DNA from: Ruditapes philippinarum
Taxonomy: Eukaryota
Length of the DNA stretch: 64,000 nucleotides
Reading direction: 5' to 3'
Assembly: GCF_026571515.1 (NCBI RefSeq)
Contig: NW_026862585.1
Span: forward strand, 124,001-188,000
A program made the translations under genes and the position numbers. Of this stretch, positions 4,701 through 64,000 are shown in pieces. The notes beneath the pieces are model-generated. The model was not told the DNA's origin. It saw nothing but the letters and a program-made list of their open reading frames with translations, and ran no database searches. Within the stretch, counting starts at the first letter, position 1. Every line of letters begins with the position of its first letter.

Positions 4701-7700
4701 AAATTTTGGCATTGTAGGATATATACAGGCACGTGGAATGTGATTTACCTGTAGGATATACGGCAGGTGGAATGTGATTTACCTGTAGAATATACAGCAG
4801 GTGGAATGTGATTTACCTGTAGAATATACGGCAGGTGGAATGTGATTACCTGTAGGATATACAGCAGGTGGAATGTGATTTACCTGTAGGATATACGGCA
4901 GGTGGAATGTGATTTACCTGTAGGATATACAGCAGGTGGAATGTGATTTACCTGTAGGATATACAGCAGGTGGAATGTGATTTACCTGTAGAATATACGG
5001 CAGGTGGAATGTGATTTACCTGTAGGCTATATGGCAGGTGGAATTAGATTTACCTGTAGGATATATGGCAGGTGGAATCTGATTAACTTGTCCAAAGCTA
5101 CAACCTAGGAAGAAGTAAGTTCGTCCAGCAATTATCATATTTGTAAAAGCTGCATTCTAAAAGTATAACTCATGTAATTGAAATGACTGAAATGCTATTT
5201 AGTTATTAAGTTTTAAATTTCAGATATGATGCAGCAAGGATTAGATTTGGCTGTGAAGCCACACATTGTTATATCTACACCAGGTCGGCTTGCTGACCAT
5301 CTTGAAAGCTGTGATACATTTAGTCTGAAAAAAATTAAATTTTTGGTATGTATCAATAATGTATAATTAGGCAAAATTTATTAATAGTTAAAATTCATAC
5401 TGTCTAGTAAGGTTTTAGATAACATGTCTGATTTCAATACCTCGCAAAATTTAAAATGTCCTAAAAAAATTCCTAATCTTATTAAAAGTCCATCCAAAAT
5501 TTTTGTACTAACAAACAAATCTTTGTTTGTTCTGAAGTTAATTGATTATACTCGATTAGTGGACACTATTATCTGTACCATTTCATTTTCAAATACATCT
5601 ATGTGATTTTTTTGTGTATGCCTTCCAATTAGATAGAGGATATGTTAAGCATATCAATATTAGTTTCTTGCCTTATTGGCATTTCTTACTATGATACATG
5701 TTAGAAAAGCTTGGGTATCAATATTTCTTAATTTATCTTACTATATACAGCCTTGTATATTTTGTGATGGTTGCAGGTTTTAGACGAGGCAGACAGATTA
5801 ATAGAAGATGACTATGGTGAACAATTAGAGACAATATTTAAAGTATTACCACGGAAACGTCAAACTTTGTTGTTCAGTGCCACAATGACAGACACATTAC
5901 AACAGCTCCAGGAAGTTGCTCTTAATAAACCTTTCTTCTGGCAACAACCTTCAGAGTAAGTGCTTGTTATCAAAAACTGCCAACTTACAAAATGTACATG
6001 TATCTTCAAACTTTTTGAAGCTGCAGACCTCAAAATAAGGAAACAAAAGTTAGAAAATAAATCTTCACAAAAAAGAATTGAGAGCTTGTACCTAAGAGAA
6101 TAAACTTTATACTAGAAATTTTGAATGTCACCATCTAAATGCTAATTACATGTAAAACTTAGTTAATTGAAACTGTGCTGTGAAAAGAATATAAATGTAG
6201 GACCATGCACTTGATAAACATACTTTGCCCTTTTCCAAACACCTTATGAATTGGTTGTTCATCTCTAAATTTTTCTGTAGCAGTAGTAAAATGATGTTTT
6301 ATTCTTCTTGATCCCCTTTCTGAGCATTGCTAAAGGTTTACGAAGACAATCAAAGTATGACTACCAAGGTATTTGTCAGAAATGACATGTTCGTACATGT
6401 AGTGAACTGTTTGTTTATTGTGTCGCCTCTACGGAGTAGTGGCGACATATAGGGATCACTTCCATGCGTCTGTCTGTCCGTCTGTCTGTCCGTCACAAAA
6501 CTTGTCCGGACTACTCCTCATAAACTACTGGTGCAATTTCATCCAAACTTTACAGGAATGATCAGTACCAAGTCTAGTTGTGCATATTGTCAGCATTTTC
6601 CGGTTCAATGATTTTTGGCAGAGTTATGGCCCTTTAATAATTTTTAATTTTAAAGTTTGTCCGGACTACTTCTCTTATACCACTAAAGCAATTTCAATGA
6701 AACTTTACAGGATTGATCTGTAGCTCAAGTCCTTGCGCATATTGCACGGGTTTTCCGGTTGAATGATTTTTGGCCGAGTTATGGCCCTTTGATAAAAAAG
6801 GTGAATTTTTCTGTGTGTTGCCAGATACACAAAAGCTTGTCCGGACTACTCCTCATAAACTACTGGTGCAATTTCATCTAAACTTTACAGGAATGACCAG
6901 TACCAAGGGTAGTTGTGCATATTATCAGCATTTTCCAGTTCAATGATTTTTAGCTCGACTTTTCTATGAAAAGGGGAGCTATCCTACTCGCCCCGGCGTC
7001 GGCGTTGGCGTCACACCTTGGTTAAGTTTTTCGTACCACCCCACTTTATTTCAGAAGTATTACAAGTATGGCTTTGAAACTTACCATACTTGTTCACCAT
7101 CATAACCTCCATCTACAGACAAGAGTACATAACTCTGTCAAGGTTTTTGACAGAATTATGGCCCTTTTTTGACTTAGAAAGTGTATTGAGCTTGGTTAAG
7201 TTTTTTGTACCACCTCACTTTATTTCAAAACCATTGGAGGTATTGCTTTGAAACTGACCATACTTGTTTACCATCACGACCTTCATCAACAGACAAGAGG
7301 ACATAACTCTGTCAAGGTTTTTGACAGAATTATGCCCCTTTTTGACTTAGAAAATACATTGAATATGGGTAAAATCCACTTATTGCCTTAACCCTTTGAG
7401 ATATTGCTTTGAAACTTTTAATGCTATTTCACATCATTACCCCCATCTGTACGCAAGAGAAGGTAACTCTGTCAAGGATTTGTTTTAAAAATTAAGGCCT
7501 TTTATCGACTTAGAATCTTGGTTAAGTTTTTAGTACCAGTCCACTTTTTGACTGAACTGTTTGAGATATTAATTTGAAAGTTGGAATACTTGTTTACAAT
7601 CATGATTCCCAAACATGTCCAGGAGAAGGTAATTCTGTCAAAGATTTTATTTGAATTATGGCCCTTAACTGTCAATGTTTTGTATTACTGCAAAAACTTT

Positions 7701-37685: not shown

Positions 37686-40237
37686 ATGGGAATGGCAACC
37701 ATGTATTGTAGAATTGTTTTAATTATGATGACCTATTATGTAAGTATCATTCTAAAATTAGTTTATTTTGAATTTTTTGAGCATTTTCAATTATTATGAA
37801 ATGTTTTTTATATTAATGTTGACATGCTTCACATAAAACAAACTTTGTTATTTTACAGGTTTCAAATTATGAAGCTGCACCTTCAGAACTGATAGGTGGA
37901 GATGGTACGACATTTAATTATTTTTTAAACATATTTCATCTGTTTCTTTTAAATGCATGCATCATTAGGAATACCATAACTTAAACAACACTAATCATTA
38001 AAAGAATATATGTAATATACCGTTTGTAAATTACATCAAGAGAGCGTTTGCAACGAATTAAATACGTTTAGAGCTTAATATGAATATGTAATAATCAAAA
38101 TTTATCTGAATCTATTTTAGTATGTGGGGCTAAACCGGCGGAAATATATTTCCTGCTTGACTCCTCTACGAGTATATGGTCCGTAGACTTCAAAAAACAG
38201 CTAGAGTTTGTTAAAGCCGTTGTAAACACCTTTGAGATTGGTCCAGACAAAACAAGAATTGGTGTTGCTTCTTTCTCATACACATTTCATGAACATTTTG
38301 GGCTTGATCGGTACAGTAAAATAGAAGAAATAGAAAATGCTGTCAAAAGAATACCACAATATATTGGCGGGACTCATACCGACAAAGCTTTGAATGGCGT
38401 CTTGAGTAGAGGTCTCAGCAAGGATAAAGTTCGCAAAGACATTGCAAGAATTCTAATTGTTCTGACGGATGGAGCATCTTTCAATGCCAAGAAGACCAAA
38501 GACATGGCACAAAAAGTCAAGGTAATGAGTGAAATAATTACATTCTAAAATTCATAAATATGTAAAGTCTCATAATGTATAACATCTATGAAATAGACTA
38601 GCGAAGTACTAGCGAAGACAATCAAGCATTGTATCTTTTAATACTGTTAAAAAAACTTAAAATACATGGAGAATATGGACTCTTGAAATTAAAAAAGTAA
38701 ATAGAATAAATCATTGAAAGGAATATAATAATCGTTTATTTTATGGTTATTGCTAGCTACATTTAGGATAATATAATATCACTCTTGTATTTTATAACTA
38801 TGTTTTACCTTTTCCAGGACGAAGGTATTGTCGTTTTCGCTGTTGGTATAGGCTCAAGGACAAATAAAGATGAACTTGCTGCTATAGCAAGTACTCCTAA
38901 AAATCCCGATGACAAATACTTGTTTGAAGTTGATAATTTTGATGATCTAGACAATACTGTCAAAAATAAGTTAACAACCAAGGCTTGTGAAGGTAAATTC
39001 AGCTAAATAAGTAAAACAAGAATATCTCTATCCTTTACAAGTGAATTTTTAAAATTTTCTTTTTAAAAACATTTTTCCATGTAACTATGCTTTGGTTAAT
39101 ATGTATGTAATATGAAAGGTTTCTTTTTTATTTTATAAAAGAATATTAAACATTAAAAGGGTATTTTACCTAAAAAGCAACCAATTTCAATCAATAAGCG
39201 CAATATTATTCATATGTTTCTGTTTAACTTTGATTATCTCAGACACGGAATGACTATTAAGTTAAAACTAACATATTCATTTTTATATGTTTTAAAGTTA
39301 AAGTTGAAGAAGAATCAGTGGAAACCGAGAAAGAGGATCAAAAGGATGACAATTCAGGTCCAGAATGTGGCAAACATAACATAGCCGATGTGATGTTTGT
39401 AGTCGACCCCTCTGAAGTTGGTTCATTTCACACAAAGCGCATATATGATTTCATTGGTAATGTTGTAAACGATTTCAATATGGGAAAAGACAACATACAG
39501 GTCGGATTAGAATCCCAAAACTGTGGTGCAGCAAATATTTCTTTAAATCAATACAACAACAGCAGAGATCTAGCAAAGGCATTTCGCTCTACAAAAGTAT
39601 CCCAATTACCAGATATGCTAAAACGGTTAAGGACCCATTCTTATACGAAAGAAAACGGTGGAAGAAACATTGCAAGACGCATGGCTGTTATTTTTGTAGA
39701 CGATAGCTTGTATGACAAGAAAACCGTCTTAGATGAAGCAAGAAGAACAAAACTTCAAGATGTTGAATTGTTTGTGGTTGCAATAGGCGATAGTGTTGAT
39801 GATGAACTGAAAGCCTTATGTAGCAGCCCAGTTGAACGGCACATCATCCGAGTACCTTCGTATCAAGAGTTGATGGAATCTAAACCACAATTTATGAAGA
39901 AATTCTGTCTTGGTATGTATTTATTGACTTATAGAAAATTTTTAATTTTTAAGATAAAAATGAGATAACAGTAATAGAATAATTAGAGATAATAACGGGA
40001 ATAAAATATTAAACATAGAATGATTATGGATTATTATGAAAATGATATTTCAATAATAGAATAATTCTGGTGTGTAGACGTGAGTTATTGAAAAAACGAT
40101 AATATATTTAGTAATTTAAACACAGGAAAATGATAAACAATTTATGTGTTTTGTAAGGAATGAGCTCATTCAGGAGTACATCGAGCAACAAATAAATTTT
40201 CAATATAATCCTCATTTTCTTTTTTTCAGGTCTTTAA
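37686..40237 (+). CDS. Secreted protein with two VWA domains, paralogue of the divergent neighbour, 432 aa
   Basis: Exons 37686-37739, 37859-37904, 38121-38521, 38818-38992, 39298-39912, 40230-40237; phases match. Signal-like N-terminus MGMATMYCRIVLIMMTYYVSNYEA; VWA1 CGAKPAEIYFLLDSSTS..GGTHT..LTDG; acidic linker; degenerate VWA2 (DPSEV); ends KFCLGL*. The start could be ATG 37686, 37692 or 37701. Confidence 0.88.
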
Positions 40238-49896: not shown

Positions 49897-52800
49897 ATGT
49901 TTTGGAATGTGTTTAAATATATATTTTGTTTTGTAATTTTGATATTTGCAGTGTATTCACAAGGTATTTATTTATAAATAATATTTGCTTTAAAACAATT
50001 GTGTTCGTTTTTAAAGATATACGTTAATTGCAATTTATATATAAAATACAATTAAAATGTTTATACATCAACTTGCTCGCATTGTCCGTAAAACACAGTG
50101 ATCTTTTTTTATTTTATTCATGACATTTGTAATATCGGTTTAAATAAAAAAATAAATCATTAGATGAAAGATTATGTCAAATTACTTAATATGAAACATT
50201 TAACATGTTAAATTGGCAATTCTTTCAGACTGTAACATGGGTGGGTTCACATACAAGGATTCAAAGTACATACTGTCACGTGAACCAAGGACCTTGTACT
50301 CGTCAAAGGTAAAATAAAACATGAACGCATGAAATCTAAATAATTTTCAAAAAGATAATGTATTTTAATGCTCTGCTGCGTTTGTACATTTGTCTGTACA
50401 TAATATTTTCGTTTCAGCCAAATCACGGCTTGTAAAGAACAAGAGCTTCCTCTTTCGGAGGTAAACTATAAATTGCGCTATCTCTCCCTTTGAGTTAGTG
50501 CATGTCGCTGAATTTAAGTATCAACAAAGACATTATGTTGTCTTGTTATAAAAATTTTGTAAACTCGAATATCGAAAATCAATGAAAACTATACCATGTA
50601 CATTTGATTGAAGTTTCAAGCGATGTTAATGTAATGATTTTTTTATCTGTATCCTCAGCGGCGTTTCCCGTTTAGCGAATTTAGCGTTGAAATGGACTGT
50701 TTCATCACGATAGAGTTGTAATTAGCTATCCAGAATATTATCGATTACGTTTTAAGTAAATGTTTTGTCTAGAATGTAATTTAAATCTAAATCGAAAAAC
50801 AAAAAAAAGAATAAAGTAGATTTTGATGAAGGTCTGCTCTACCGCAAATTACCTACACGAAGCCTTCTACGTACCGTCTGCGTGGAAACACGGACCCCGC
50901 AGCATTAGCAAGGTCATTTTGAAGAGAAGTTGCTGTCAAAAACAAGACATGCTTAACCGACAAAAAACCAATCCTGCGCTGGTATTGTGACCCTTTGCGG
51001 ACCTTCATCTTGCCTCCTTACGTGTGTACCATGTAGCCGGACTCCCTCCCAGGCTCTGGTTATGACGGTATGGTGTACACTAAACGCCGCACCAATCTGG
51101 CAGAAGGTGTCTCCCTGCTGTACTATCCCTACAGCCCTCCATAACTCTGCTTCTATCAAATGCCGCCTAATGTAAGCATCCGCCATATCGAAGTGACAAA
51201 TGCAAGAAATATAAGCTGAATGACAATAAGCCAGTTATGTCACTGTATAACAAAGACATATGATTGTATACCCCATCAAAAACATAAACATATTGGAGTT
51301 CATGCTTTCCATGCTACCTAGGCGAGTTGTAACGAATTAGTCAACACGGATTCATGTCAGGGGCAAGCCTCGTTACCGTCCAATGGGCGGGTCACCTCAG
51401 TACGGATATTCCGATCCGAACCGCAAAATATGACAGATATTATTATTATACTTGTATAAATATAAAAATTAACTCATGGTGCTTAGCAACGTAGCAAAAG
51501 GTAAGCAGTATATACGTGTGCATTTAATATGACAGTTATGTTTTTATAATAAATTACCAGGGGATGTGAGTGAGCGGGCATCTTTGCATTCAGCTTTTAT
51601 ACATGGCGCCCGTTCAATAAAGGTACATGCTCGCGTAATTTTATCCGTTAATGTATGCGTTATTTTCCTTAAATTTTCACGTGCGTGCTCAGTTTGTGTG
51701 CAAGAATGTTTGATATACATGTATACAATGAGAACGGATGTACAATGTCACATTATTTTAAGTTCCAAACTTCCAAAACAAGTGCAAAGATTTGAGATTT
51801 GTTGTTAATTTCTTAAACTATTTGTATCATGATCGTATTTGGTGCACTTTTAATCAATTCTCTGATTACACGTAATTTTTATAACAGATACATTGCGAAA
51901 CCATTGGAACACGTCTGGTGACAATCGGAACTGTATCGGAATACCATATTCTCCAAGGAAACAGTGAGTTTACACAAACATGCATACATTTTTTTTAAAT
52001 AATTATTTTTCTTTCCGTAAGCAATTATATACACACATAAACGGGTAGAGTTTCCTTATTACATGCCTTACATGTCACAAATGTGTTCTGTTGTTATATT
52101 TCTACCCTTTCCATATCAAGAAATATTCCCTTGTTTCTTTTTGCATAGTTATAAAGCATTTGACTTCTATGGAGATGTGATTTACAAACTTCGTAGGATC
52201 ATGGGTCATTGTAATTTTTCTGCCGTCTTCACTAAAATTATCAAACGGTTTATTAAAAGAGGTTATGACCCAATTATTATAAGGCATACCGCATGCTTGG
52301 TGTTCAACCCTTTTACAGTTTGACGCTACGCTTTCCTCTTTTAATTACATCTGACGGACCAAGTGGGAGACTCTATGATGGACAGTTTAAGATCTAGTTG
52401 GTCCTTTGGGACTGAATTGTCTAAATGTTCGTCTTCTGCCTTGCTTCGTCGGGCCATTGTAGGTAATTTTCTTGTTGCTCTGCCTTCCTTTAAGGCATCG
52501 AGTACTTTGGTAATGGTCATTAGGGTGTAACTTTTTTTACATATTTACATAATTTTGTATGTGTTTTATTTATTTCGTCTTATGTAACCATGACCATTGT
52601 TAGAATTTCACTTGGCGGGGATTAATTTTATACACATTTTCGTGTCATTCAGGAACATATTGGGGCTAAGAGTGAGGTTTGGCGCGCCTAAAACCGGTTT
52701 AAACTCGCCAGTGGTTTAACTACCACTGACCGTTCCAAGGCGGTACCCCTTTGTGTTCCTTCACGTGTTTTTCTTGTCTGTATTGTTACTTGTTTTTGGA

Positions 52801-55800
52801 TGTTTACATGTTTTTGTGATGTCTGTCTTGTTGGATTGTCGTTGACGGTAGGTTTTTTTCTCTCCCCCCCCTCTTCCATTTTTAACCCCCCCCCACCTTT
52901 TCACCCGTACAGCCCTTTTCCCTTTAATTCTCTTATGGGCCCGTTTTTGTTTATATTATTTCACATTGCGTGTCCCGCTCCTTTCGCCCTTGTGTCCGCT
53001 CCGGGTTTTTGTTTGGTGCCTTCTGGGTGTCCTGCTTGGATGTGTCCGGGGGCAGCGTCCTGTGAACGTTGCCTTTGCCTTGTTGATCTTTATTCTTGAT
53101 ATTTTACACGAAAGATGATATTCTGCCACTCTCGTAGACTAGTACTCACTGTCGCCCATTGGGCTTAAAGGGATACAACTTAAATATAAATAAAACAGTC
53201 AACTCGAGCGAAACATCATCAGACAAGAGTGGCATATTTGTCAAACTTTCTCTACATAAATTATGTTCTTTTACAGACGTTTGTGAGAAGAAGTTTTGGA
53301 TAGGATCACCGAATATTTTCAATCCGAAAACCCGATCAGTAATGTCGTCAAGTGCAATTGATCCTGATATCCTGGATAACAAGCCCCTGTGTATCATCTT
53401 GAACAAAGGATTGACAGTCACTAATTGCAGTGATAAATATCAATCTATCTGTGAAAAAAGTGTGTATCCTAAATAAAATATAATCTTCGTGTTTTGCAAG
53501 TCCACCATTTTATTCTACAAACAGTAAATTACATATGCAGACATTAATATTTGCTGGTTTTTGCCGAAGCAGTGAATTAGATCAATTCAGATTTGTGGCT
53601 AGTATTAAAATGTTTTCGAAATAAGTTTACTCATTTATAATTTCAGAGCTACATTGTTTATTGAATGTTAAAAGTTTTTTATTACCTAGTAATGAATAAC
53701 TTTAAATATATGATGTAACTCCGTATAATGAAACTTTTGCAGATGAAACCCGAAAATCTCTTTGGGTCGAGGAACTGCTCAACTTTTCACTACCTATAGG
53801 TAACACATGAACATTTTCGTGTCTCTTTAATTATATTTGTTTGGTTTTACGAAGAATGTCACCCATTTTTGGTCATTTCTCGGGGGCCATTCCACCGCCT
53901 GGCTTTTCTGGGGAGCTCAGTTACCGACAAATTATCCTAAATGTTTTCTGAATCAGTGATGAGAGACAACTTACCATTAGACTCAATGCTCGAGATCATT
54001 AGTCATGGCAAAATTACGCCTCGGTCGAGGATCGAACCAGCATTCTATGGATTTCAAATCCGATGTTATTCCTTATGAGCTAAGCGGCCTCTTAAAGTAA
54101 ACTTAAAGAAGATTTAAGAAAATCAAAAAAAATATTTTGTATAAATAAAGGCAGATAAACTGGCAAATAATATGTTTTGGATGAGGCTTTTTTATCAATA
54201 ATTTGAATTAATGTTGTCAGAATAAAATAGAAATATAAGTAGAAAGATTTGAGATGACACTCTTACAATACACGAAAAGTGGTAAAAGTAGTCAATATAT
54301 TACCACTTTATGTATCATGTTTTCATCAAATTTCAATACAGAGAAAAGCATACTGAAACAAATTGCATTTACGTCCCAATAAGAAATGATTAGGAAAAAG
54401 ACTGCATATAAAAGTATTTAGGGTCTTTAGACAATGCAACATCTAGTTTTGTTATCATCGTGTTGAAAAAGGATTACTTCGGTGAATTTTGGATACATAT
54501 AGACCTAGGATCTGTGCTAAAGACGACAATTTAAGGTTTATCAAGGTAGTAATATCTAGCCAACCTGTACATACTGTTCACTCCTCAGTTTTGAAATACT
54601 GCCATTGAATTTTGCACAAGAGCAAAGAGATATTTTAATACCTTTCTTATACTTGTTACAGGTTATGATTTAAACAATGCCATTGCATGTGTTGTCAAAA
54701 TAGTGGATGATTTTCTAACTTTACTTTCAGATGAAGTGTCGAGGAATTGCGAATACCTACAAAAGAACAAGCAAAAGGAGTATGTGAAATCAAATGTGTC
54801 AGTTGAAGACCTATACGATAAGGTCAGGCTTCTCTTACTCAACAAGCTGATTTGCCATTATGACTACTTCATTTGTTGCTGTTAAAATAGAAGAAGAAAA
54901 AACAATAAAAAACTATTTTGAAAAGTTATATAATTATGTACATACAATGTCCTCTGTTACTCTGTAAAAATACAGTTTAAAACATTGAACTTCTTTACAT
55001 TAACTTTTTGATTCTGAATAAATCTGATTTTTAGATCATTTAAGAGATTCATAACAAAGTCATTTCTGATGGATTAAGAAATTATTCCATGTATAATTGA
55101 AGATATGACGATTTCAGATAATATACATAAATATAAGGTAAAGTTAGTAGAAAATAAACTAGCTTTATTCATACATTTTTCAGGTGTTTAACTCGTCAGA
55201 TTATGACCCAGTGAATGTTTTAAAACAACTTAAGAACGCAACATATGCATGTAAAGAAACCAATGAAACATTTCAAGCCGTAAGACTAATAAAGGTCGTG
55301 AAAATGATGACAAAACTTGCAGAATTGGATTTAAACAACTCAAAGGCATTGGCAGAAGACAGGCTAAAGGTAAATATGTACCAGCTCTGAAGATATTTTG
55401 TACTTATATATTACTTTGAAAACAAAATGATTAAATTGAAATAAATAAAATTTGATATTGAGCTTGTCATATCAAAATATGGCTTGTTATCTCTCATTTA
55501 TTTGTTGCTATAACAAAAAGACTTAAGATATTTCAAGAAATATAGATTTAACTGCCTACCTAGATACGACTTGTATAAGATACCATAATTATTAATAATT
55601 TAATGCAATTACAAGAAATTGAAACCAATTCTTCTTTATTATATCTGCCTTAATTATATATTACTTTGCATTTGTATGTCGGTCGGTTGGTCGGTCCATA
55701 GACCAAATGGTTTCCGATCAATAACTGAAGAACGCTTAAGCCTAGAAACTTAAAACTTGGCATGATGATTATCCATGACCAGTATATGATCTCTATTGAT

Positions 55801-58800
55801 TTTGGTGTCAAGGGTTCAAAGGTAAAGGTCACATTGACCTTTCCGGTTAAAATGGTTTTTTATTAATAACTAAAGAATGTTTTAGCCTAGAAACTTCAAA
55901 CTGGGTATGATAGTTGTTAATGACCAGCAAATGACCTCTATTTATTTTGGAGTCAAGAGGTCAAAGGTTTAGGTCACATTTACCTTGAAGGTACAAACGG
56001 GTTCCGATCGATAACTTTATAACCCAGAAGTTGTTGGCCCTCAAACTTCATAGTTGAATTCGACTTCCCAAGTAGATGACCCCTGTTGATTTTGGGGTCA
56101 AGTGGTCCAAAGTACTCGTAAAGGTCATATTGACCTTGTAGGTAAAAACTGTTTCCGATCAATTACTTGACAAGACATGTGCCTTTGGGCCTCAAACTTT
56201 GTAGGTGCATTGTTCTTAGGAAGTAGTGACCACTTTTGATTTTGGGATCAAGGGGTCACAGGTCAAGGTCACATTGATCTTGTATGTCAAAACGGTTTCC
56301 TAACAATAACTGGACAACTCATGGACCTTTGACCTTCAAACTTCACAGAAGCATTGCCTTCGGTCAGAAGATGCCCTCAATGGATTTTGGGGTCAAGGGG
56401 TCAGAGGTCAAGATCATATTGACCTTATAGTAGAAAACCGTTTTTGATCAATATTTCAACAACTCATGGGTCATTTACCTTCAATCTTCACAGTTGCATT
56501 GATCTTGGCCAATAGATAACCGATATTGATTTAAGGGTCAAAGGTCAAAGTCACATTGACCTTGCCTTGGCCAGTAAATAACCGCTATTGACTTAAGGGT
56601 CAAAGGTCAAAGTCACATTGACCTTACACGTAATGACGGTAAATATATGCATATATTATTTGGTAAGATTCGTGATAACTTAATCATAAAATTGCTATAC
56701 ACAACCTTAAAAGTCACAATTACCTAGTGACTAGTCATGACCATTAGATAACCCCTATTGATTTTTTATTCATTAGGTTAAAAGTCAGTTACAATTACTT
56801 ACCACATGACTAATTGGCTGCTGATAGGGGGCATACATGTTTTATAAACATATCTTGTTTGTATGGATAAAATGGTCAAAAGATCTTCTTTTATGAATTG
56901 ATAATTAACCAATAGTTCAGTAATGTTAAAATAAGTAACAACTTTAGAAGAAAAGACTCGACGTTTTAGTAAAAAGACTAAACCGTTTATAAATCTTGTT
57001 TACGGGAGCCATGCCAAATTTTGCAAGAAACATGACTTTAATTATATTTAAAATCAAAACTTTATTTTGTATCTTTATTATTCATAATTCAACTGTAAAA
57101 GAAAACGCATAATGGTTAATAATATTTGACCTTCATGTTTCATTGTTTTATATTGGTTTTTGTATAATTGCATTGCAGCCATATCTGGATATCATGAGTA
57201 ATCTCGTCGGGGATCATACAATTTACAGTTGGATTGTTACGATAAACCAGGTATCAATGCTTATTTTACGTTTTAAAAGTTTATAAATTTAAGGTCAATA
57301 TGTTGTTCAACTTAAATCTGTCATATTCGAAACTACTAGCTTGACCAACACGTCAATGCCTCAAGAAGAGAAAAAAGGATATCTTCCTATTTGAAAAATA
57401 GTATATGTGAAATCAAATGTGTCAGTTGAAGACCATAATGATAAGCTAAGATAAGTAGAAGATAATATAATACAATTCTAAAAAAGTATATGTACATAAA
57501 ATGCCCTAGGTTGCTCTGTAAAAAGAAAGTTTAACAAATATTGAGTTTTTTAAAAATTTCATTACATGAACTTTTTAATTCTGAATAAATCATCTGGTTT
57601 TTCGATCATTTAATTGATTCACTACAAAGTAATTTCTTAGGGATTAACAAAATATTCCATGTAACATTAAATATACAACGATTTCAAATAATATACATAT
57701 ATTAAACTGAGGCGAAAGAAAAAAATCGAAACTTATTCACACATTTTTTTTCAGGATTTTAATGCGCCAGATAATGCGAACATTTACATTTTTAGTCCGC
57801 TTGAGAACGCAATATATGCTTACAAAGAAAATAATGAAACGATACAATATGACATATTAATAAAGATCTTGGACATTTTTGCGACACAGGCAGGTGTGGA
57901 TTTAAATGCCCAAAATTCCTTGACAAAAGAAAGTCTAAAGGTAAACTTGTGTAACTTCTTTAAAGATTAAACTGTAAATCGTGACATTTAAATATTTAAA
58001 TATTATTTATAAAATATTAAACAAAACAGGTAAGACCCAAGGCAACTTATATAATTCTTTTTTTATTCGTTAAAACATAGAACAAGTAATATTCTTGATG
58101 TCAGTATACAAAGTAAACCAATTATGAATGGCAAATGCAAATGGTTATTTATTTATCTAAATAGTCATTCATAAGAAAAGAAAAAGACAATCTGTGTAAA
58201 AATTGGTATTTCTTCGGTTCATGTTTCAATTGACTGATTTCTAAATATAGATATAAGTGTAGTCTTGTTATATCATCTATACTTAGTCTTCTTTTTAGAT
58301 AAAATGTTGAAAGGTGTAAACATATGAGATATGCCCGATTCATTGTTTTATATTGGTTCTTGTATAATTTTATTGCAGCCATTTCTGGAGATCAGGAGTA
58401 ATCTCCTAGGGAATCATACAAAAGAAAGTTGGGTTATGATAGTATACCAGGTATCAATGATTTTACGATTTAAAAGAATATAAATTTCAGGTCAATTAAG
58501 AAATATTTTGTTCACCTTAAAACTATCACTACTGAAAATACTAGCTTGACCAACATGCCAATGCCTCAAGAAGAGAAATAAGCATATTTTCCTATTGGAA
58601 AATAGAGTAAGAATCCATTTTGCATAAACTCCCTTATCATTTATGTATTTTTTGTATATATTTCCTGCTTGACTTATTATAAAGTTATATCACTTTTAGG
58701 AATAAAAACTAAGTTATTACATTTTAAAGAATGAACAAGTTTAGTTTTTATCGATATCTACCATTTTGTTGATTATTTTGGTGATGAATAAACTTTTCAC

Positions 58801-61800
58801 ATTAACGGTTTTGATACTTTTTGCATTTTTCAGACAGGCAATAGCGGATATGAATTTAGCTATGACTTTAAAAGTATCACGAATGCAGAAGATGAATCTG
58901 GCAAGAAAGCTTGTATGTATGTATGTATGTATGTATGTATGTGTGTATGTGTGTGTGTGTGCGTGTGAACTCCTAGTATGATATCTTCTATATAAACGAA
59001 AAACATGATAAATTTTATGAATATTCTTTTGTTAAAGAAAAATATAGAAGCTGTTAATAATACTAATTAATAATACGAAAATTATACGAATATTTCTTTC
59101 ACCTATACTTGATAGCTTATAGTAGGAATAGATTCTAAAGTTTTATGCCATCAAGTCAATGTCACTTCTTTTCTAATATTTCATGTTTTAGTTTTTTTTC
59201 TCGAACAACTGGATTTGAAAAACGAAGACAAAGAAATTAATTTCATTTTAGACCATTGGTGTACGCGATGTGTATATTTTTTAAACCACATTGGATACAT
59301 TTTTTATGTGCACATATAGGCACATTTTTGCAAGCGATGGCAGTATAAGGTATTTGTAAGTGGTGAATATCCAACCAATCCGTAAACACCGTTAACTTAT
59401 CTGTAATAGAATATTGACAAAAAAAATTGATTTGTTTGTTTCTTTATAGTTTTTTAGTTATTCAGTAGAGTAATTCAATTGAATAATGACATTTTAAATG
59501 TTGCAATAAAGTATCATTATATTTTGTCTTTAACATTTCTTTTAATTAAAGTTGCGAAGGATTGTGAGTATCGACCAAGGGATGAACAAATGGAACGTAT
59601 GAAAACAAATGTGTCAATTGATGATTTGTATTACCAGGTTTGTCCTGATTAACAAAGCAAAATCGTAACCTAAATTTTTCATGTATTATAACTTACGTGC
59701 TTTTTGTGTGTGGAGTCGGTAAAATAAGACAACTGAATATCAATAAACATTATGCAGCAAACCGTTTTGTATCCTGTAAAGAGTTTTGTATTACGCTTTG
59801 TGAATATTGTAAATCGAAACATGTATATATATTTTAAGAAATAGAACATGTTTAAACTTAGTATAATGATCATATATATTTTCCGATTTGTTAAGTAAAA
59901 AACATAACATAATATAACATAACATGACATGACATGACATAGTTCTATTTTAAATGTATTTTCTACTTAGAAAAAATATATATACATACCTAACTTAGTA
60001 TTATATTTGAAAAACATGAGACAATTTTTTCACATAGATCAATTTCGTATATGTAAAGTCAATGTTTAATATAGTTGGCATTAATTTGATGTTAAGCAGG
60101 AACCAAAGTCGTAGAAATTTGTCAATTTAGATCCTCACAAAATGTATGTAAAAATATATTGTTTCATTCATTTTTTTGAGGATCTAAATTGACAAATTTC
60201 TATGTCTTTGTTATATATATATTTCAGGTCATTAACTCGTCAGATTATGATAAAGTGTACGTTTTAAATCATCTGAAGAACGCAACAACTGCTTTTAATG
60301 AAAATAATGAAACGATACCATCTGACACAATAATAATGACCATGAAAATGATTACAAAACTTGCAGAAGGTGTGGATGTAAATGACCAAAGGTCCTTGAC
60401 AAAAGAAAGTCTGAAGGTAAACGTGTGTCACTTCTTTAAAGATTAAACTGTGAATCGTGACATCTTAATATTTAAATACTATTTATAAAAGATTAAACAA
60501 AACAAACAGGGAAGACCCAAGGCAACGTATATTATACTTATTTCATTCGTTAAAAACATAGAACAATTGATATTACAATGTAAACCAATTAAGAATGGCA
60601 AATATTTTCTTTCCATTTTATTTTTATACTTATATCTTTTTTTATCTTTCACTTATTTATCCACATATCATCATTTAGATATGACTAGTTAATTTCTCAG
60701 TATATACTATTTACCTCTATGTTATAACAAAAATACTAAATATATTTCCTTAGAGAAATATCCGCTTTAATTATTTATTTTTTATGATATACTACACGAA
60801 AGATCTTTTGATGTGATGATAATTTTACGTTTTAAGTATTTCGGTAATTGAAAATGTAAAAACAACTTTTATCACGTTTTAAATAATATGTAATGTTAAC
60901 CGTTAACACTGATGTATTATTAGTTGTATATGTGTTGTATATGAATATGTATGTGCTGTTCTAAACTTATTATTCGTCTTCATCCTATAAGCTAGAACCC
61001 AGCATATATCTGTACAAGAACTTTAATTTGATGTATTGAAACTTGACACTGACCTCGAAACGCAATCATGGTTTACTATCCTAAGTTAAACAGTTAAGAC
61101 AATTTCTCTTCGACTTTCATACACATTAACAAATTTTGAACAAAATCATTTGTGTTTTCTTATATGTACTAGTCTTTTTAATTAATTATTTATTTACATA
61201 TACATATGTATGTCTTTCAAAAGATAAAAAGAAAATGGTAATCTGTGTAAAAATCGGTATTTCTTCGATTCCTGTTTCCATTGACTGTTTCTAGCTGTTG
61301 ATAAAAGTTTAATACTAGATATAGTACTTATTATATCATTTATACTATAGTATTCTTATTAGATAAAATGTTGAGAGGTTTAAACATATGATACATGTCC
61401 GATTCACTGTTTTATATTTGTTTTTGTATATTTTATTGCAGCCATATCTGGAGGTCGTGAGTAATATCCTAGGGGATAATACAAAAGAAGGTTGGATTGT
61501 TATAATAAACCAGGTATCTATGCTTGTTATAAGGTTCAATCATATAGATAAAAGCTCGATTGTGAAATCGAATAAGCTTATATAAATCGTTTTCAAAATC
61601 GCTAACACTAACAAGACTTAAATTATATGCTGTCGTACTAAACAACATATGTTTTCTTTGTAAGAATTCAATAGCAAATCTCAAAGTTAAGAATAATTTT
61701 GATCAATTGACCACGAAATCCGTACCATCTATGCAAATTTGTCATATTGTCCTATAAAACCATGATAAGATACTCAACAAAATGAACAGATTAAAAACAA

Positions 61801-62971
61801 CAACATTTATCCGAATCTGTCCTTTTATTTATGTTATTTCTTAACACTTTATTTTCAGACAGGCAGTGGGGCAAATGAATTACTCGATGGCGTTGCAAAA
61901 TTCATGACAAACTTAAATGAAACAGACGTAGTTGAATCACTAAATAACACATGTATGTATGGTATACTATTTCACAATTATTTCATTAAGATAACTTATC
62001 CTTCTATATCTTTTTTGTTTGTCAAATGTAAAATATTGTATACTTCGATTAAAAGGGTGAAGAATAAATCATATTCATCTATACGGATGAAAAATAGCTA
62101 AGGTTAACAATGATTTTATTCTTAAGTTAAATAGTCTATACTTTAAATAATCATGTTTTGGTTAGATTGTCGTCGCATTAACACTGTAAACGTTATATGC
62201 AGTCTTTCCAGCTTAACTGGCGGAGGAACTTCAGTGCACTTTCGAGCAATTTCTTCAGACACAAACGGGCACCTGAGTAGAACCACTTACGTTGTATAAG
62301 CCAGCTAGGTAGCTTCCTCACATAAAGAAATCCAAATTCCCTTTAGGGATTCGCACCTACGGTTGTAAGGGACAAATGGTTTGAAGCTACTCTGCTCAAA
62401 TAATTCACATTTAGTTGTGAAACACTCATCTTCTATTAATACCGATTAATGTTATTGGTGCAACAAATAAATCAGGGGAAGTGCAGAAACTTATGTTTTG
62501 ATACGCTTATTTCTCTTATTCTGTTTCAAACAGATGCATTATTTAGTCAAAATAAAATGAGGTATATATCGCAAACATACGTATTCAATAACATGGAAAT
62601 ACTGGTTAAGTGCTTAGTAACTTTTGTAAACTTTTAAATTAAAAGGAAACTTTTTGAAATATTTTTATCGCTTTAGAAGATATGACGTGCATGAGAGGTG
62701 CTGTGCTTTCTTTTATCTCATAAAAAGTTAACGTAAGACACTATCTATTGTCATTGTTTAAGTTACTTTAAAAGGCATTCATTTTCCAGAAAGGTTTTAC
62801 TCATAGCAGCAGCTGTTATACTTTTCTTTGTAACATCTTTTTTTACAGATGTCGCGAAAGCATCAATACGTGATTGCGATAATGGTATTCATTTCCCGAA
62901 CCATACTGACATGGAATTGCCAGATTGGCTAGCAAAGCCCAAGAACAAGTTATCTCTAAACTGTGACAAAG
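49897..62971 (+). CDS. 5' portion of a probable adhesion-GPCR-like receptor (signal peptide, C-type-lectin-like domain, repeated GAIN-like exons); continues beyond the window
   Basis: Phase-compatible chain: 49897-49963 (MFWNVFKYIFCFVILIFAVYSQ), 50229-50308, 51888-51963 (IHCETIGTRLVTI), 53277-53459 (FWIG..C..NCSDKYQSICE), 53743-53799, 54662 or 54731-54822, 55184-55369, 57179-57250, 57755-57940, 58379-58450, 58834-58912, 59552-59637, 60228-60416, 61442-61513, 61859-61952, 62849-62971. SNLL.....SW and GIHFP....PDW segments resemble GAIN subdomains. GPS and 7TM are not in the window, so the family call is inferred; a polycystin-1-like protein is an alternative. Confidence 0.68.
50830..51186 (-). 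mobile_element. Decayed Tc1/mariner transposase N-terminal fragment
   Basis: RAVGIVQQG...IGAAFSVHHTVITRAW...GPQRVTIPAQD, then (frameshifted) FLTATSLQNDL..GVRVSTQTVRRRL: the paired-like HTH region of Tc1, with stops and frameshifts. Confidence 0.8.
52160..53105 (+). mobile_element. 3' fragment of a Penelope-like retroelement (ORF C-terminus plus structured 3' region)
   Basis: FYGDVIYKLRRI..F...F.KIIKRF.KRGY...IIRHTACLVFNPFTV*RYAFLF resembles, from memory, the C-terminus of abundant invertebrate PLE-type RT ORFs; followed by a GC-richer, T-rich tail. Element boundaries are approximate. Confidence 0.62.
52651..52760 (+). ncRNA. Candidate twister ribozyme, type-P5 permutation
   Basis: P5 52651-52665/52746-52760; P2 GAGT 52670-73/ACTC 52703-06; GAGG 52674-77; UAA 52700-02; P3 CAGTGGT/ACCACTG; P4 ACCG/CGGT with loop TTCCAAGG. 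P1 is not canonical and pseudoknot T2 has one mismatch. Confidence 0.55.
53865..54090 (-). mobile_element. tRNA-derived SINE-like element
   Basis: Minus strand GGCCGCTTAGCTCATAAGG...GGTTCGATCCTCGACCGAGGCG (A and B boxes) followed by a non-tRNA body. Confidence 0.55.
55633..56859 (+). mobile_element. HINE/pearl-like element with GGTCAAAGGTCAAGGTCAC tandem units
   Basis: (GGTC)n start, repeated units TTTCCGATCAATAACT..GATTTTGGGGTCAAGGGGTCAAAGGTCA, 3' GGGGGCATA plus hairpin ATGTTT..AAACAT and CTTGTT. Confidence 0.72.
58913..58966. repeat. (GTAT)n(GT)n microsatellite starting at a splice donor
   Basis: Read directly from the sequence. Confidence 0.9.
62155..62390 (-). mobile_element. SINE family 1, degenerate copy
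   Basis: CTTTCCAGCTTAACTGGCGGAGGAA..AGAACCAC..TAGCTTCCTCACAT..GGGATTCGCACC. Confidence 0.55.
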
Positions 62972-64000
62972 GTATATATACCTTTTTTACAGTTAAATGA
63001 AAAGATAAGTGTTGTCTCGTCATTATGGCTTGTACATCTCGAATTCGCTATTCCTTTCATTATCCGTTTATATCAATATTGACAAATAGGGCATGCTATT
63101 TATCAACCACCTAAATAATAACCCATTTTTAAGCCGTTCGGCGTAATAGCGTAGTGGTTAAGCGTTTGTTATAGATGTGTACAGACTCTGGTTCGAATCC
63201 TGAAAAAATGCATTTTTCTTTTCTTGTTTGTTTTTAGATATTTTCAAAGAACTAGATTTTAGTTCATCGTGATTTTCATTCATTATAAAACGTATTCGGA
63301 AATCCAAAAAGCATGGTAAATTGCAGATTTGCATCCGACCTTTAGAAACTCCGTAACCACTACGCTACTGGGATTTACGTATCCAAATGTAATAAATGAA
63401 CAATTGCACAATCTATCATATCACAATGACACGATCGATTATTGCAAACCTTGTCGTGTTCATCATTTAAAAAGCTACACGCGCAGCAATACAATGGCAG
63501 GAAAGACAATCACGAGAGCACGTGCCGTTGTATAATATGTATGATAAGCGTCACTATTGGCGCCATGCAATGACGGTCTGCAACATATCTGTCATCGCAC
63601 TAGCACGTGATAATAATGACACAGCCGTATACTTTATACGAAAACACAGATAAGGAAATCCAGATCTTTCGAATCATATGCATCATTTAATTCTACACTT
63701 ATCAAATCACTCGCTATGCTGACTCGGGCTCTAAATGCGTTCTGTAGCCTCTGAAGCTGTTTATGCACGAGAAAAATGTGTACCAACTAACTAATGACCT
63801 CTGGACGGCAATTTACTACTTTCATTTTGGAATAAAGAGGCAAAATGTTCTCTAAATGAGTTGAAAATAAAACTTACCTCGACCACGTACAATATCATTT
63901 ATGCACCTATATAAATGGCTGTTTGGCTATATTACAAATATATTCGAGTCATCTAACATGTTACCTTAATTATTCATGTATTATAACTTTCGTGCTTTTT

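What the first reader, a model, noticed from the sequence alone, without database searches (positions are those of the whole stretch)
54662..61952. Triplicated GAIN-like exon cassette with interchangeable splice phases in a lectin-bearing receptor
Seen: three homologous exon sets. Copy 1: G 54731-54822, H 55184-55369, I 57179-57250. Copy 2: H' 57755-57940, I' 58379-58450, J' 58834-58912. Copy 3: G'' 59552-59637, H'' 60228-60416, I'' 61442-61513, J'' 61859-61952. All are stop-free with intact AG/GT. H and I exons are phase 0-0, J is 0-1 and G is 1-0, so the whole array reads through in frame and any H, I or J copy can replace another. Established: adhesion GPCRs normally have a single GAIN domain. 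Inference: this is either a receptor with three stacked GAIN-A-like helical modules (an extendable stalk) or a Dscam-like combinatorial cassette system that diversifies the ectodomain.
Basis: partly seen in the sequence, partly recalled or inferred. Interest (0 to 1): 0.78.

Follow-up and report, generated by a model that had tools for sequence, protein, structure and literature searches.

The report
Clam receptor with repeated GAIN-A modules
A Manila clam adhesion receptor gene has duplicated the block of exons that encodes the helical half of its GAIN domain, and RNA shows that all the copies are spliced one after another into a single message, so the receptor has a longer outer part, not a set of alternative versions.

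Summary
All ten exons lie at the stated coordinates, with AG/GT borders, one open frame each and the stated phases. The window is from Ruditapes philippinarum.

The gene is an adhesion GPCR. A GPS motif and 7TM exons lie 1.6-8 kb past the window end.

One G-H-I-J block encodes a whole six-helix GAIN subdomain A. In the model of the RefSeq protein P0003, residues 7-292 align with the BAI3 GAIN crystal structure (Z 21.9).

The array is not three equal copies. It is two old units, A and B, which a tandem paralog 35 kb downstream also has. Unit A here carries an extra inner H'-I' pair, a mosaic with a half-G remnant.

Spliced contigs from three studies join I→H'→I'→J' and G''→H''→I''→J''→next exon. 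One 1,649-nt contig carries the whole series. So the stacked-module reading is supported, and I saw no mutually exclusive splicing. RefSeq wrongly splits the gene at J'/G''.

The block was found in no other species. A Mercenaria homologue has one GAIN. The function is inferred. This is a new variant of a known kind, of moderate interest.

The parts
49897..49965 (+). first coding exon (start codon and signal peptide) of the receptor, RefSeq model P0002 residues 1-23
   Evidence: tblastn of P0002 on the window, 100% over residues 1-22
50228..50311 (+). exon 2, start of the CTLD-like region (approximate borders)
   Evidence: tblastn of P0002 residues 23-50, 96%
51885..51965 (+). exon 3, CTLD-like region (approximate borders)
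   Evidence: tblastn of P0002 residues 49-75, 93%
53138..53473 (+). open frame holding exon 4, the C-terminal half of the CTLD-like region (exon borders inside it not determined)
   Evidence: The open frame contains the P0002 sequence. No Pfam hit at E<=1. Homologous to the second CTLD-like region of paralog P0001.
53742..53798 (+). exon 5, linker before unit 1 (approximate borders)
   Evidence: tblastn of P0002 residues 136-154, 95%
54731..54822 (+). exon G, unit 1 (A type): helix 1 of a GAIN-A-like bundle; phase 1-0
   Evidence: P0002 residues 155-185; G-to-H joint seen in contigs of X1, X4 and X9
55184..55369 (+). exon H, unit 1 (A type): helices 2-3 and the start of helix 4; four N-glycosylation sequons
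57179..57250 (+). exon I, unit 1 (A type): helices 4-5
   Evidence: spliced to H' in X1, X4 and X9
57404..57445 (+). remnant of the 3' half of a G exon (not an exon now); marks the breakpoint of the inner duplication
   Evidence: 87% identical to 54781-54827 (D9); tblastn 12 of 14 residues; lies in the intron removed by the I-to-H' joint
57755..57940 (+). exon H' (extra copy; 3' third of B type, 5' two thirds strongly diverged; 2 of the 3 conserved sequons lost)
   Evidence: present with 0 mismatches in X1 and X4 contigs
58379..58450 (+). exon I' (extra copy, B type)
   Evidence: H'-to-I' and I'-to-J' joints in X1 and X4
58834..58912 (+). exon J' (A type, closes unit 1/2): helix 6; phase 0-1; donor lies at the start of a TGTA microsatellite
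   Evidence: (54% identical to the paralog's JA)
59552..59637 (+). exon G'', unit 3 (B type): helix 1 of the canonical GAIN subdomain A
   Evidence: contiguous with J' in the X1 contig by exact length
60228..60416 (+). exon H'', unit 3: helices 2-3
   Evidence: P0003 residues 17-79
61442..61513 (+). exon I'', unit 3: helices 4-5; aligns with the ADGRL3 GAIN sequence
   Evidence: (alignment starts at P0003 residue 78)
61859..61952 (+). exon J'', unit 3: helix 6
62849..62971 (+). next exon (K): start of GAIN subdomain B. The later exons (GPS, 7TM) lie beyond the window at G000:C11072:188549-195856.
   Evidence: J''-to-K joint GT..AG in X1, X4 and X9; P0003 residues 134-175; GPS 48.9 bits and 7tm_2 82.5 bits on P0003

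Best explanation
This is one adhesion GPCR gene of the Manila clam.

SHOWN: The four-exon block G-H-I-J encodes the six-helix GAIN subdomain A, and that block has been duplicated in tandem. The A/B duplication is older than the duplication that produced the neighbouring paralog. In this copy, unit A later gained a further inner H'-I' pair through duplication plus exchange with B-type sequence. All copies are ordinary exons spliced in series. The protein therefore reads: signal peptide, CTLD-like head, ten-helix A module (G-H-I-H'-I'-J'), six-helix canonical GAIN-A (G''-H''-I''-J''), GAIN-B with an intact HL|T GPS, then 7TM.

INFERRED: Only the last unit packs on subdomain B, as in solved GAIN domains. 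The upstream helices form a separate glycosylated bundle. It lengthens the stalk between the head and the autoproteolytic, tethered-agonist part, so it changes the reach and the force path of the receptor rather than its signalling core. H'-I' may be a tolerated passenger that is drifting fast.
For: - Exon anatomy and phases.
- Serial splicing. One X1 contig (1,649 nt, depth 22.7) has GT..AG joints I>H', H'>I', I'>J', G''>H'', H''>I'', I''>J'' and J''>K. Exactly 237 nt (72+79+86) lie between H' and H'', so J'>G'' is contiguous. X4 (a second study) has I>H'>I'>J'. X9 (a third study) has I>H' and J''>K.
- RefSeq P0002 reads G-H-I-H'-I'-J' in series, and paralog model P0001 reads JA>GB in series.
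- Receptor identity: GPS 48.9 bits, 7tm_2 82.5 bits; phmmer to ADGRL3 gives E 7.8e-38 over P0003 residues 78-458.
- One unit equals GAIN-A. The AlphaFold model of P0003 has six helices in residues 10-119, with pLDDT about 66-85. Residues 7-292 align with 4dlo_A (BAI3 GAIN) at Z 21.9, rmsd 3.5 Å, 267 residues, and also with BAI2, GPR110, CELSR1 and latrophilin GAIN domains. Foldseek gives E 1.9e-10.
- Upstream units are paralogs of that unit. They hit the N-terminal part of Pfam GAIN: unit A alone covers profile positions 2-80 (20.1 bits); G..J' of this gene gives two stretches (23.1 bits); P0001 gives two stretches at 40.6 bits, above the cut-off of 26.5.
- History. The paralog has A and B units only. 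Unit 2 has A-type flanks and a B-type core. In the tree, H'I' sits with the B type (support 92/97) on a branch of 0.66, against 0.07-0.17 for the others.
- Sequons are conserved in units 1 and 3, and 2 of 3 are lost in H'.
Against: - The model of the upstream part (P0002) is poor: mean pLDDT 38, alignment of 3 sequences. Its fold, and whether it is a separate bundle, are not shown.
- The Pfam GAIN scores of the single upstream units are below the curated cut-off.
- The J'>G'' joint was not listed by read laying, because a repeat at the donor was skipped. It rests on the exact spacing in one contig.
- The runs are labelled only 'RNA?'. Low-depth contigs (3.7-4.6 against 22.7) lie in the I'-J' and J'-G'' introns.
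- The one raw polyA run laid (X17) had no reads on the exons, so there are no junction counts, and contigs drop rare isoforms.
- X4 also holds an I-like>J'-like joint and an I-like>H''-like joint with divergent exon ends.
- No experiment bears on the function.
Confidence: 0.62

Rival explanations
1. The repeated helical units are a recognition surface under selection for change, not a passive spacer. Haplotypes in the population carry different numbers or orders of H-I blocks and different residues. The ectodomain is then diversified at population level, as in other bivalve immune-type receptors.
For: - Non-synonymous differences exceed synonymous ones in all 10 pairwise comparisons of I exons, although the counts are small.
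- Unit 3 against paralog unit B: 31 non-synonymous and 3 synonymous differences, pN/pS 2.7, one-sided p = 0.05. The ratio is 0.42 in 238 GAIN-B/7TM codons and 0.45 in unit 1 against A.
- The 5' two thirds of H' differ more from every other copy (55-64% identity) than the flanking introns differ from their relatives (76-91%).
- X4 holds joints of other block arrangements with divergent exon ends.
Against: - The excess comes from a low pS (0.033), not from a raised pN. pN is 0.08-0.09 across the whole gene.
- The test is borderline and the exons are short.
- The X4 variants could be paralogs, alleles or skipping. I could not separate these.
- No ligand or expression data are available.
Confidence: 0.2
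2. A Dscam-like or other alternative-exon system: in each mRNA only one of the H, I or J copies (or one whole unit) is used, giving combinatorial ectodomains.
For: The copies have matching phases, so any exchange or skip stays in frame. X4 has an I-like>J'-like joint without H'-I', and an I-like>H''-like joint.
Against: - In X1, X4 and X9 the reference-like contigs include the copies in series.
- The odd X4 joints differ from the reference in the exon ends themselves, so they do not come from the same pre-mRNA as the reference allele.
- The RefSeq models include the copies in series.
- No docking/selector pattern stands out among 69 inverted-repeat pairs (25 listed). The one strong pair is a local hairpin.
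- The units are not equivalent: only the last one adjoins subdomain B.
Confidence: 0.05
3. There are two genes or two products, as RefSeq annotates. One is a secreted CTLD-like protein with helical units 1-2 that ends in the J'-G'' intron (P0002). The other is a separate receptor that starts at a Met inside G'' (P0003).
For: RefSeq models XP_060559240.1 and XP_060559239.1 are split there. Low-depth X1 contigs lie in the J'-G'' intron at 59027-59183 and 59218-59372.
Against: - The X1 contig carries H' and H'' exactly 237 nt apart, which equals I'+J'+G''.
- The split codon at J'/G'' gives the same residue as the paralog's JA/GB junction in P0001.
- P0002's tail is a translated microsatellite.
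- P0003 would lack a signal peptide.
Confidence: 0.08

Closest known systems
Canonical GAIN-domain adhesion GPCRs (latrophilin/ADGRL, BAI/ADGRB; structures 4DLQ, 4DLO)
   Same: The 7tm_2 core, the GPS with HL|T, and a GAIN domain with a six-helix subdomain A on a beta-sandwich subdomain B. The best sequence match is ADGRL3 and the best fold match is BAI3 GAIN.
   Different: Those receptors have one subdomain A, of 2-6 helices (PMC11697300, passages read), usually after a HormR domain. Here a second A-type unit with an inner partial repeat, about 230 residues of extra GAIN-A-like helices, stands before the canonical one. The head is CTLD-like, not HormR.
Mercenaria mercenaria 'adhesion GPCR L3-like' (P0008), the closest protein of another species found
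   Same: 46% identical over 97% of P0003. It has the same GAIN-B, GPS and 7TM, and its GAIN-A aligns with unit 3.
   Different: It has a weak HRM hit (22.8 bits) and one GAIN stretch (residues 193-386), with no second unit and no CTLD.
Tandem paralog in the same clam (RefSeq P0001 + P0009, about 35 kb downstream)
   Same: The same architecture and two GAIN-A units, A and B. Its exons are 88-96% identical in DNA to units 1 and 3 here.
   Different: It has two CTLDs instead of one, and no inner H'-I' pair.
PKD1-type GAIN domains with extra subdomain-A helices
   Same: More than six helices before subdomain B. PMC11697300 reports up to eight, with unindexed helices (passage read).
   Different: That is reported as a few extra helices in predicted models, not as a repeat of the whole six-helix unit encoded by a duplicated exon block.
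Dscam-type mutually exclusive exon clusters (from my own knowledge, no call)
   Same: Tandem homologous exons with the same phase.
   Different: Here the copies are all included in one mRNA.

Membership tests
Adhesion GPCR (class B2) | Secretin-type seven-transmembrane domain | tested here: met
   Pfam 7tm_2 82.5 bits on P0003. Exon hits of 21 and 28.7 bits downstream of the window. phmmer to ADGRL3 gives E 7.8e-38.
Adhesion GPCR (class B2) | GPS motif with the H-L-S/T cleavage triad directly before the 7TM | tested here: met
   Pfam GPS 48.9 bits at P0003 residues 241-285. The sequence reads C-x-C-T-H-L-T-S-F. Cleavage itself was not tested.
Adhesion GPCR (class B2) | GAIN fold (helical subdomain A plus beta-sandwich subdomain B) | tested here: met
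   Model of P0003 (pLDDT 69.6): residues 7-292 against 4dlo_A give Z 21.9, rmsd 3.5 Å, 267 aligned. The six other top non-7TM rows are GAIN domains at Z 18.3-21.4. The Pfam GAIN score on P0003 is only 20.1 bits, below the cut-off of 26.5.
GAIN subdomain A (claim for the upstream units 1 and 2) | Sequence homology to subdomain A of GAIN domains | tested here: met
   The units are paralogous to unit 3/B (H copies 39-56% identical, E down to 6e-15). Pfam GAIN is the best family: unit A alone covers profile positions 2-80 at E 4.6e-4; G..J' of this gene gives two stretches at E 5.7e-5; P0001 gives two stretches at 40.6 bits, above the cut-off. The single-unit scores are below the curated cut-off.
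GAIN subdomain A (claim for the upstream units 1 and 2) | Folds as a helical bundle like subdomain A | tested here: inconclusive
   The AlphaFold model of P0002 is all-helical over residues 154-400, but its mean pLDDT is 38, so I did not use it for a fold search. The Atlas look-alikes are GAIN-A clusters at scores of 0.78-0.87, which is a lead only.
GAIN subdomain A (claim for the upstream units 1 and 2) | Packs against subdomain B and helps hold the tethered agonist | not testable with these tools
   In the chain only unit 3 adjoins subdomain B.
Mutually exclusive (Dscam-like) exon cluster | Tandem homologous exons of equal phase | tested here: met
Mutually exclusive (Dscam-like) exon cluster | Only one exon of a cluster in each mRNA | tested here: not met
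   One X1 contig carries H, H' and H'' and the three I copies. X4 and X9 contigs carry I>H'. Rare isoforms cannot be excluded from contigs.
Mutually exclusive (Dscam-like) exon cluster | Docking site paired with selector sequences in the introns | tested here: inconclusive
   Of 69 inverted-repeat pairs of 16 nt or more (25 listed), none forms a one-to-many pattern. All but a local hairpin are 70-83% complementary and AT-rich. No comparative test was done.
   There is no Lectin_C hit at E<=1 on P0002 or on the frame 53138-53473. The region aligns with the second CTLD-like region of paralog P0001, whose Lectin_C score is 67.6 bits with 2 stretches. It is therefore a diverged CTLD-like region at most.

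The most novel reading that the evidence does not exclude
GAIN subdomain A can exist as a free-standing, duplicable module. In this clam it has become a hypervariable part of the ectodomain that varies in copy number. Different haplotypes would carry different numbers or orders of H-I blocks, and selection would favour amino-acid change in them. The receptor's outer part would then be diversified at population level for recognition of non-self. The odd pattern of silent sites (pS 0.03 in unit 3 exons against 0.18 elsewhere and 14-28% divergence in the introns between them) would be the trace of exon-limited exchange among copies.
Probability: 0.15. Interest if true: 0.65.

Novelty: new variant of a known kind. 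Interest (0 to 1): 0.4.

Why it matters
GAIN domains are described as having one helical subdomain A of two to six helices that caps subdomain B (PMC11697300, passages read). A natural receptor that carries a second complete A unit and an inner partial repeat, all expressed, would show that subdomain A can be repeated without subdomain B. It would also be a natural test case for how the length and mechanics of the stalk affect force-dependent activation of adhesion GPCRs. Magnetic-tweezers work shows that GAIN domains respond to forces of a few pN (PMC10607210, passages read).

For clam genomics the practical point is that RefSeq splits both this gene and its paralog into two models each. The correct gene joins LOC132719487 to the 'ADGRE3-like' model.

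The limits are plain. The family is a two-gene, species-restricted one as far as the databases show, and nothing is known of its function.

Tried and rejected
- Exon-by-exon Pfam scan of the ten exon peptides: no family except a chance COX5A hit at E 0.047. The exons are too short, so I used database proteins that contain them.
- AlphaFold of P0002 with a 3-row alignment: mean pLDDT 38. I used it only for secondary structure and not for a fold search.
- Raw polyA RNA run X17: no reads on any exon, so no junction counts.
- Homologues of the unit in other species. The H profile searched against 1.84 billion representatives gave 7 proteins at E<=0.001. Four are from this clam. P0005-P0007 match only profile positions 4-34 in several stretches. 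I read only P0006 of these, a repeat protein that looks unrelated. A word-indexed search of P0001 residues 305-610 gave 3 proteins among 2,639 candidates, all from this clam. Both searches can miss fast-evolving relatives.
- Literature. A search on GAIN domain / subdomain A / adhesion GPCR / tandem duplication found 22 papers, 15 listed. A phrase search for tandem, duplicated, second, two or multiple GAIN domains found 14 papers, none about receptors. A search on adhesion GPCR / bivalve / expansion / C-type lectin found 196 papers, 15 listed, none on this gene by title or abstract. I did not see supplements. The supplementary figures of PMC11697300 on unindexed helices, and its 916 unmatched GAIN models, could hold similar cases.
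- Inverted repeats as docking/selector pairs: nothing convincing.
- tRNA scan of 54000-64000: none.
- Earlier findings by words: none.
- Assembly artefact: rejected, because independent RNA contigs carry the extra copies.
- The VWA exons at 38-40 kb as part of this gene: rejected, because the start exon with the signal peptide lies at 49897.
- Whole-region gene conversion as the cause of the low pS in unit 3: rejected, because the introns are diverged.

Full report
**The observation**

I read window 54600-62100 and checked each exon by script. All ten exons have AG before and GT after. Their lengths are 92, 186, 72, 186, 72, 79, 86, 189, 72 and 94 nt, and each has one stop-free frame.

The copies are homologous both as protein (tblastn; alignment A1) and in parts of the introns. 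With the local composition (A+T about 71%), a 62-codon frame stays open by chance with p = 0.005, and all ten exons together with p about 1e-14.

A remnant of the 3' half of a G exon lies at 57404-57445, just before H' (family D9).

**Where the window lies and what the gene is**

The window is G000:C11072:124001-188000 of a 1.4-Gb assembly. I fetched 60 kb downstream.

Open frames past the window end carry a GPS motif (Pfam GPS 38 bits on the exon frame) and 7tm_2 pieces (21 and 28.7 bits).

A profile of the five H exons, searched against 1.84 billion representative proteins, returned 7 proteins at E<=0.001. Four of them are real matches. They are RefSeq models of Ruditapes philippinarum:
- P0002 (XP_060559240.1, 401 aa): signal peptide, CTLD-like region, G-H-I-H'-I'-J', then a tail translated from the intron microsatellite.
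- P0003 (XP_060559239.1, 'ADGRE3-like', 462 aa): starts at a Met inside G'', then H''-I''-J'', GAIN-B, GPS and part of the 7TM.
- P0001 (XP_060559238.1): from the neighbouring paralog.
- P0004 (94 aa): an H-type exon read on into its intron; I did not look up its source.

Pfam on P0003 gives 7tm_2 at 82.5 bits, GPS at 48.9 bits and GAIN at 20.1 bits. phmmer against the PDB sequences gives ADGRL3 at E 7.8e-38, and the alignment starts in exon I''. The gene is an adhesion GPCR.

Its first coding exon is at 49897-49965. The VWA exons at 38-40 kb therefore probably belong to another gene.

**One G-H-I-J block is a whole GAIN subdomain A**

The AlphaFold model of P0003 used an alignment of 10 proteins and has a mean pLDDT of 69.6, with about 66-85 over residues 11-100. 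It has six helices at 10-19, 25-41, 48-63, 75-88, 91-104 and 107-119. These correspond to G'' (helix 1), H'' (helices 2, 3 and the start of 4), I'' (helices 4 and 5) and J'' (helix 6). A beta domain and the 7TM helices follow.

VIA-align puts model residues 7-292 on the BAI3 GAIN domain (4dlo_A, Z 21.9, rmsd 3.5 Å, 267 residues). It gives similar matches to BAI2, GPR110, CELSR1, Gpr126 and latrophilin GAIN domains at Z 18.3-21.4. Foldseek agrees, with 4dlo_A at E 1.9e-10.

The upstream units are paralogs of this unit, and Pfam GAIN is their best family:
- Unit A of the paralog alone covers profile positions 2-80 (20.1 bits).
- G..J' of this gene gives two stretches (23.1 bits).
- P0001 gives two stretches at 40.6 bits, above the cut-off of 26.5.

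The single-unit scores are below the curated cut-off. The model of P0002 is poor (pLDDT 38, helical throughout residues 154-400). So the fold of the upstream part is inferred from homology and is not shown. The ESM Atlas look-alikes of P0001 residues 305-610 are 'GAIN subdomain A' clusters at scores of 0.78-0.87, which the tool rates as leads only.

**The array is two units plus an inner repeat, not three equal copies**

The assembly holds only five H-type exons (5 matches among 22 candidates scored). Three are here. Two are in a tandem paralog about 35 kb downstream, which has two complete blocks: GA-HA-IA-JA and GB-HB-IB-JB.

- Unit 1 here (G, H, I) is of the A type. Its DNA identity to GA/HA/IA is 0.88-0.91.
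- J' is also of the A type: 0.79 to JA, against 0.62-0.63 to J'' and JB.
- Unit 3 is of the B type, at 0.90-0.96.

So the A/B duplication predates the gene duplication, and G-H-I...J' is the old unit A, interrupted.

The insert is a mosaic:
- The first 150 nt after I resemble the start of the I-to-J intron.
- Next come the half G and an A-type G-to-H intron (76% identical to that of unit 1).
- The 3' third of H', the H'-I' intron (80% to that of unit 3) and I' are of the B type.
- The I'-J' intron is A type again (76% to the paralog's).

In a tree of the H+I stretches, H'I' groups with the B type (support 92/97). Its end branch is 0.66, against 0.07-0.17 for the others. All clam units stand apart from the single Mercenaria unit, which is on a long branch. 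At least two events are needed: a duplication from mid-G to the I-J intron, and an exchange with B-type sequence.

**Are the copies used together or as alternatives?**

The look-up of sequencing runs listed 24 runs. Ten hold part of the stretch, and the best hold 0.15 of the sampled words, which is about the exon share of the stretch.

I laid X1, X4 and X9 (contigs from three studies) and X17 (raw polyA reads) on 57000-62999.

- X1: contig 1 (1,649 nt, depth 22.7) shows GT..AG joints I>H', H'>I', I'>J', G''>H'', H''>I'', I''>J'' and J''>K. H' lies at contig positions 839-1025 and H'' at 1262-1451. After correcting for the cut offsets, 237 nt remain between them, exactly I' + J' + G'' (72+79+86). 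So J'>G'' is contiguous, although the tool skipped the microsatellite at that donor. The same contig shows G>H and H>I of unit 1. These appear as mis-placed joints on the G remnant and on H'', because G and H lay outside the laid stretch.
- X4: a 593-nt contig carries I>H'>I'>J'.
- X9: contigs carry I>H' and J''>K. One further contig carries G>H>I>J of B type with 5-12 other letters per exon, which I take for the paralog.
- X17: no reads on the exons.

The spliced joints show that these 'RNA?' runs contain cDNA. The split codon at J'/G'' gives the same residue as in the paralog's model. The RefSeq split into two genes is therefore most likely an annotation error at the microsatellite.

I saw no joint that swaps one reference copy for another.

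**Results against, or not explained**

1. X4 also holds an I1-like>J'-like joint without H'-I' (depth 17.7) and an I-like>H''-like joint (depth 15.2). Their exon ends differ from the reference. They could be other haplotypes with a different block number, unassembled copies, or skipping in a divergent allele. With one read-laying run I could not tell which.
2. Low-depth X1 contigs lie in the I'-J' and J'-G'' introns. A minor unspliced or short form is not excluded.
3. Between the paralogs, pN is 0.08-0.09 everywhere. pS is 0.18 in 238 GAIN-B/7TM codons and 0.195 in unit 1 against A, but only 0.033 in unit 3 against B, with 3 synonymous against 31 non-synonymous differences. That gives pN/pS 2.7, one-sided p = 0.05. 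The introns between those same exons differ at 14-28% of aligned sites, and Fisher's test of silent sites against the best-aligned intron gives p = 0.002. All ten I-exon pairs have dN above dS, but the counts are tiny. This agrees with the sister note s1-804645. I have no settled explanation.
4. The first 130 nt or so of H' are 55-64% identical to every other copy, less than the neighbouring introns are to their relatives. H' has lost two of the three sequons that H, H'', HA and HB share.

**How it most likely works**

Shown: one mRNA and one protein chain, in this order: signal peptide; CTLD-like head; ten helices of the A type (h1-h5 from G-H-I, then h2'-h5' and h6 from H'-I'-J'); a six-helix canonical subdomain A; subdomain B with an intact H-L-T site and a Stachel-like strand; then the 7TM.

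Inferred: only unit 3 caps subdomain B, as in the solved structures. The upstream helices form their own glycosylated bundle or bundles. Units 1 and 2 carry 7 sequons and unit 3 carries 7. These bundles lengthen the link between the head and the force-sensitive GAIN-B.

Magnetic-tweezers work shows that GAIN domains unfold partly, and the NTF and CTF separate, at forces from a few pN to about 20 pN. It also suggests that the A/B interface may break first (PMC10607210, passages read). An extra helical module in series would change the reach and compliance of the tether. That is my inference and has not been tested.

H'-I' may be a tolerated passenger under relaxed constraint. Its dN/dS against the B copies is 1.2-1.3.

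**Comparison with what is known**

The closest protein of another species that I found is from Mercenaria mercenaria (P0008, 46% identical over 97% of P0003). It has a weak HRM hit, one GAIN stretch, GPS and 7tm_2.

Searches for the two-unit region in other species found nothing. Phrase searches of the paper library found no report of tandem or duplicated GAIN domains in receptors. I saw those papers only as listings, apart from the two named above.

**Verdict**

This is a member of the adhesion GPCR family with an unusual, lineage-restricted repeat of GAIN subdomain A, so a new variant of a known kind. Interest is moderate (0.4). The anatomy and expression are solid. The function, the fold of the upstream part and the population variation remain open.

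Noticed in passing
window 38084-39003 and 39261-39965 (+): Two von Willebrand factor A domains in large open frames (Pfam VWA 97.7, 28.9 and 78.7 bits). They lie about 10 kb upstream of the receptor's start exon and probably belong to a separate gene.
   Followed up: partly
window 55705-56625: A tandem array of a 145-nt unit (about 6 copies, 73-77% matches) plus a 62-nt repeat, inside the H-to-I intron. It accounts for most of the extra length of this intron compared with the paralog's (1,809 against 907 nt).
   Followed up: partly
window 58912-58958: A (TGTA)n microsatellite begins exactly at the J' splice donor. RefSeq model XP_060559240.1 reads through it as a Cys/Met/Val tail and ends there, which splits the gene into two models. 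The paralog is also split into two models (P0001 and P0009).
   Followed up: yes
window 60104-60210: A hairpin with 39-nt arms, 92% complementary, and a 29-nt loop ends 18 nt before the H'' acceptor. The matching 60 nt of the paralog's intron are only 51% identical. It may be a small inserted element. Any effect on splicing is unknown.
   Followed up: no
window 62154-62386: A dispersed repeat with at least 40 other genomic places at 77-79% identity (3,129 first-look candidates). Summed RNA-contig depth in that bin is about 900-5,800. This is an abundant, transcribed short interspersed element in the J''-to-K intron.
   Followed up: no
window 59665-59705 and 63960-64000 (continues into L005): A 90% identical repeat in two different introns of the gene. 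The open frames over it are also alike. This is a second dispersed element.
   Followed up: no
G000:C11072:209469-237928 (L007-L010): A tandem paralog of the receptor with two CTLDs and two complete G-H-I-J units. pN is about 0.08-0.09 along the whole gene pair, but pS drops from about 0.18-0.20 to 0.03 in the unit 3/B exons alone, while the introns between those exons are 14-28% diverged.
   Followed up: partly
run X4 laid on window 57000-62999: Contigs with an I1-like exon joined directly to a J'-like exon, and an I-like exon joined to an H''-like exon. Both have exon ends unlike the reference. This hints at haplotypes or copies with other block arrangements.
   Followed up: no
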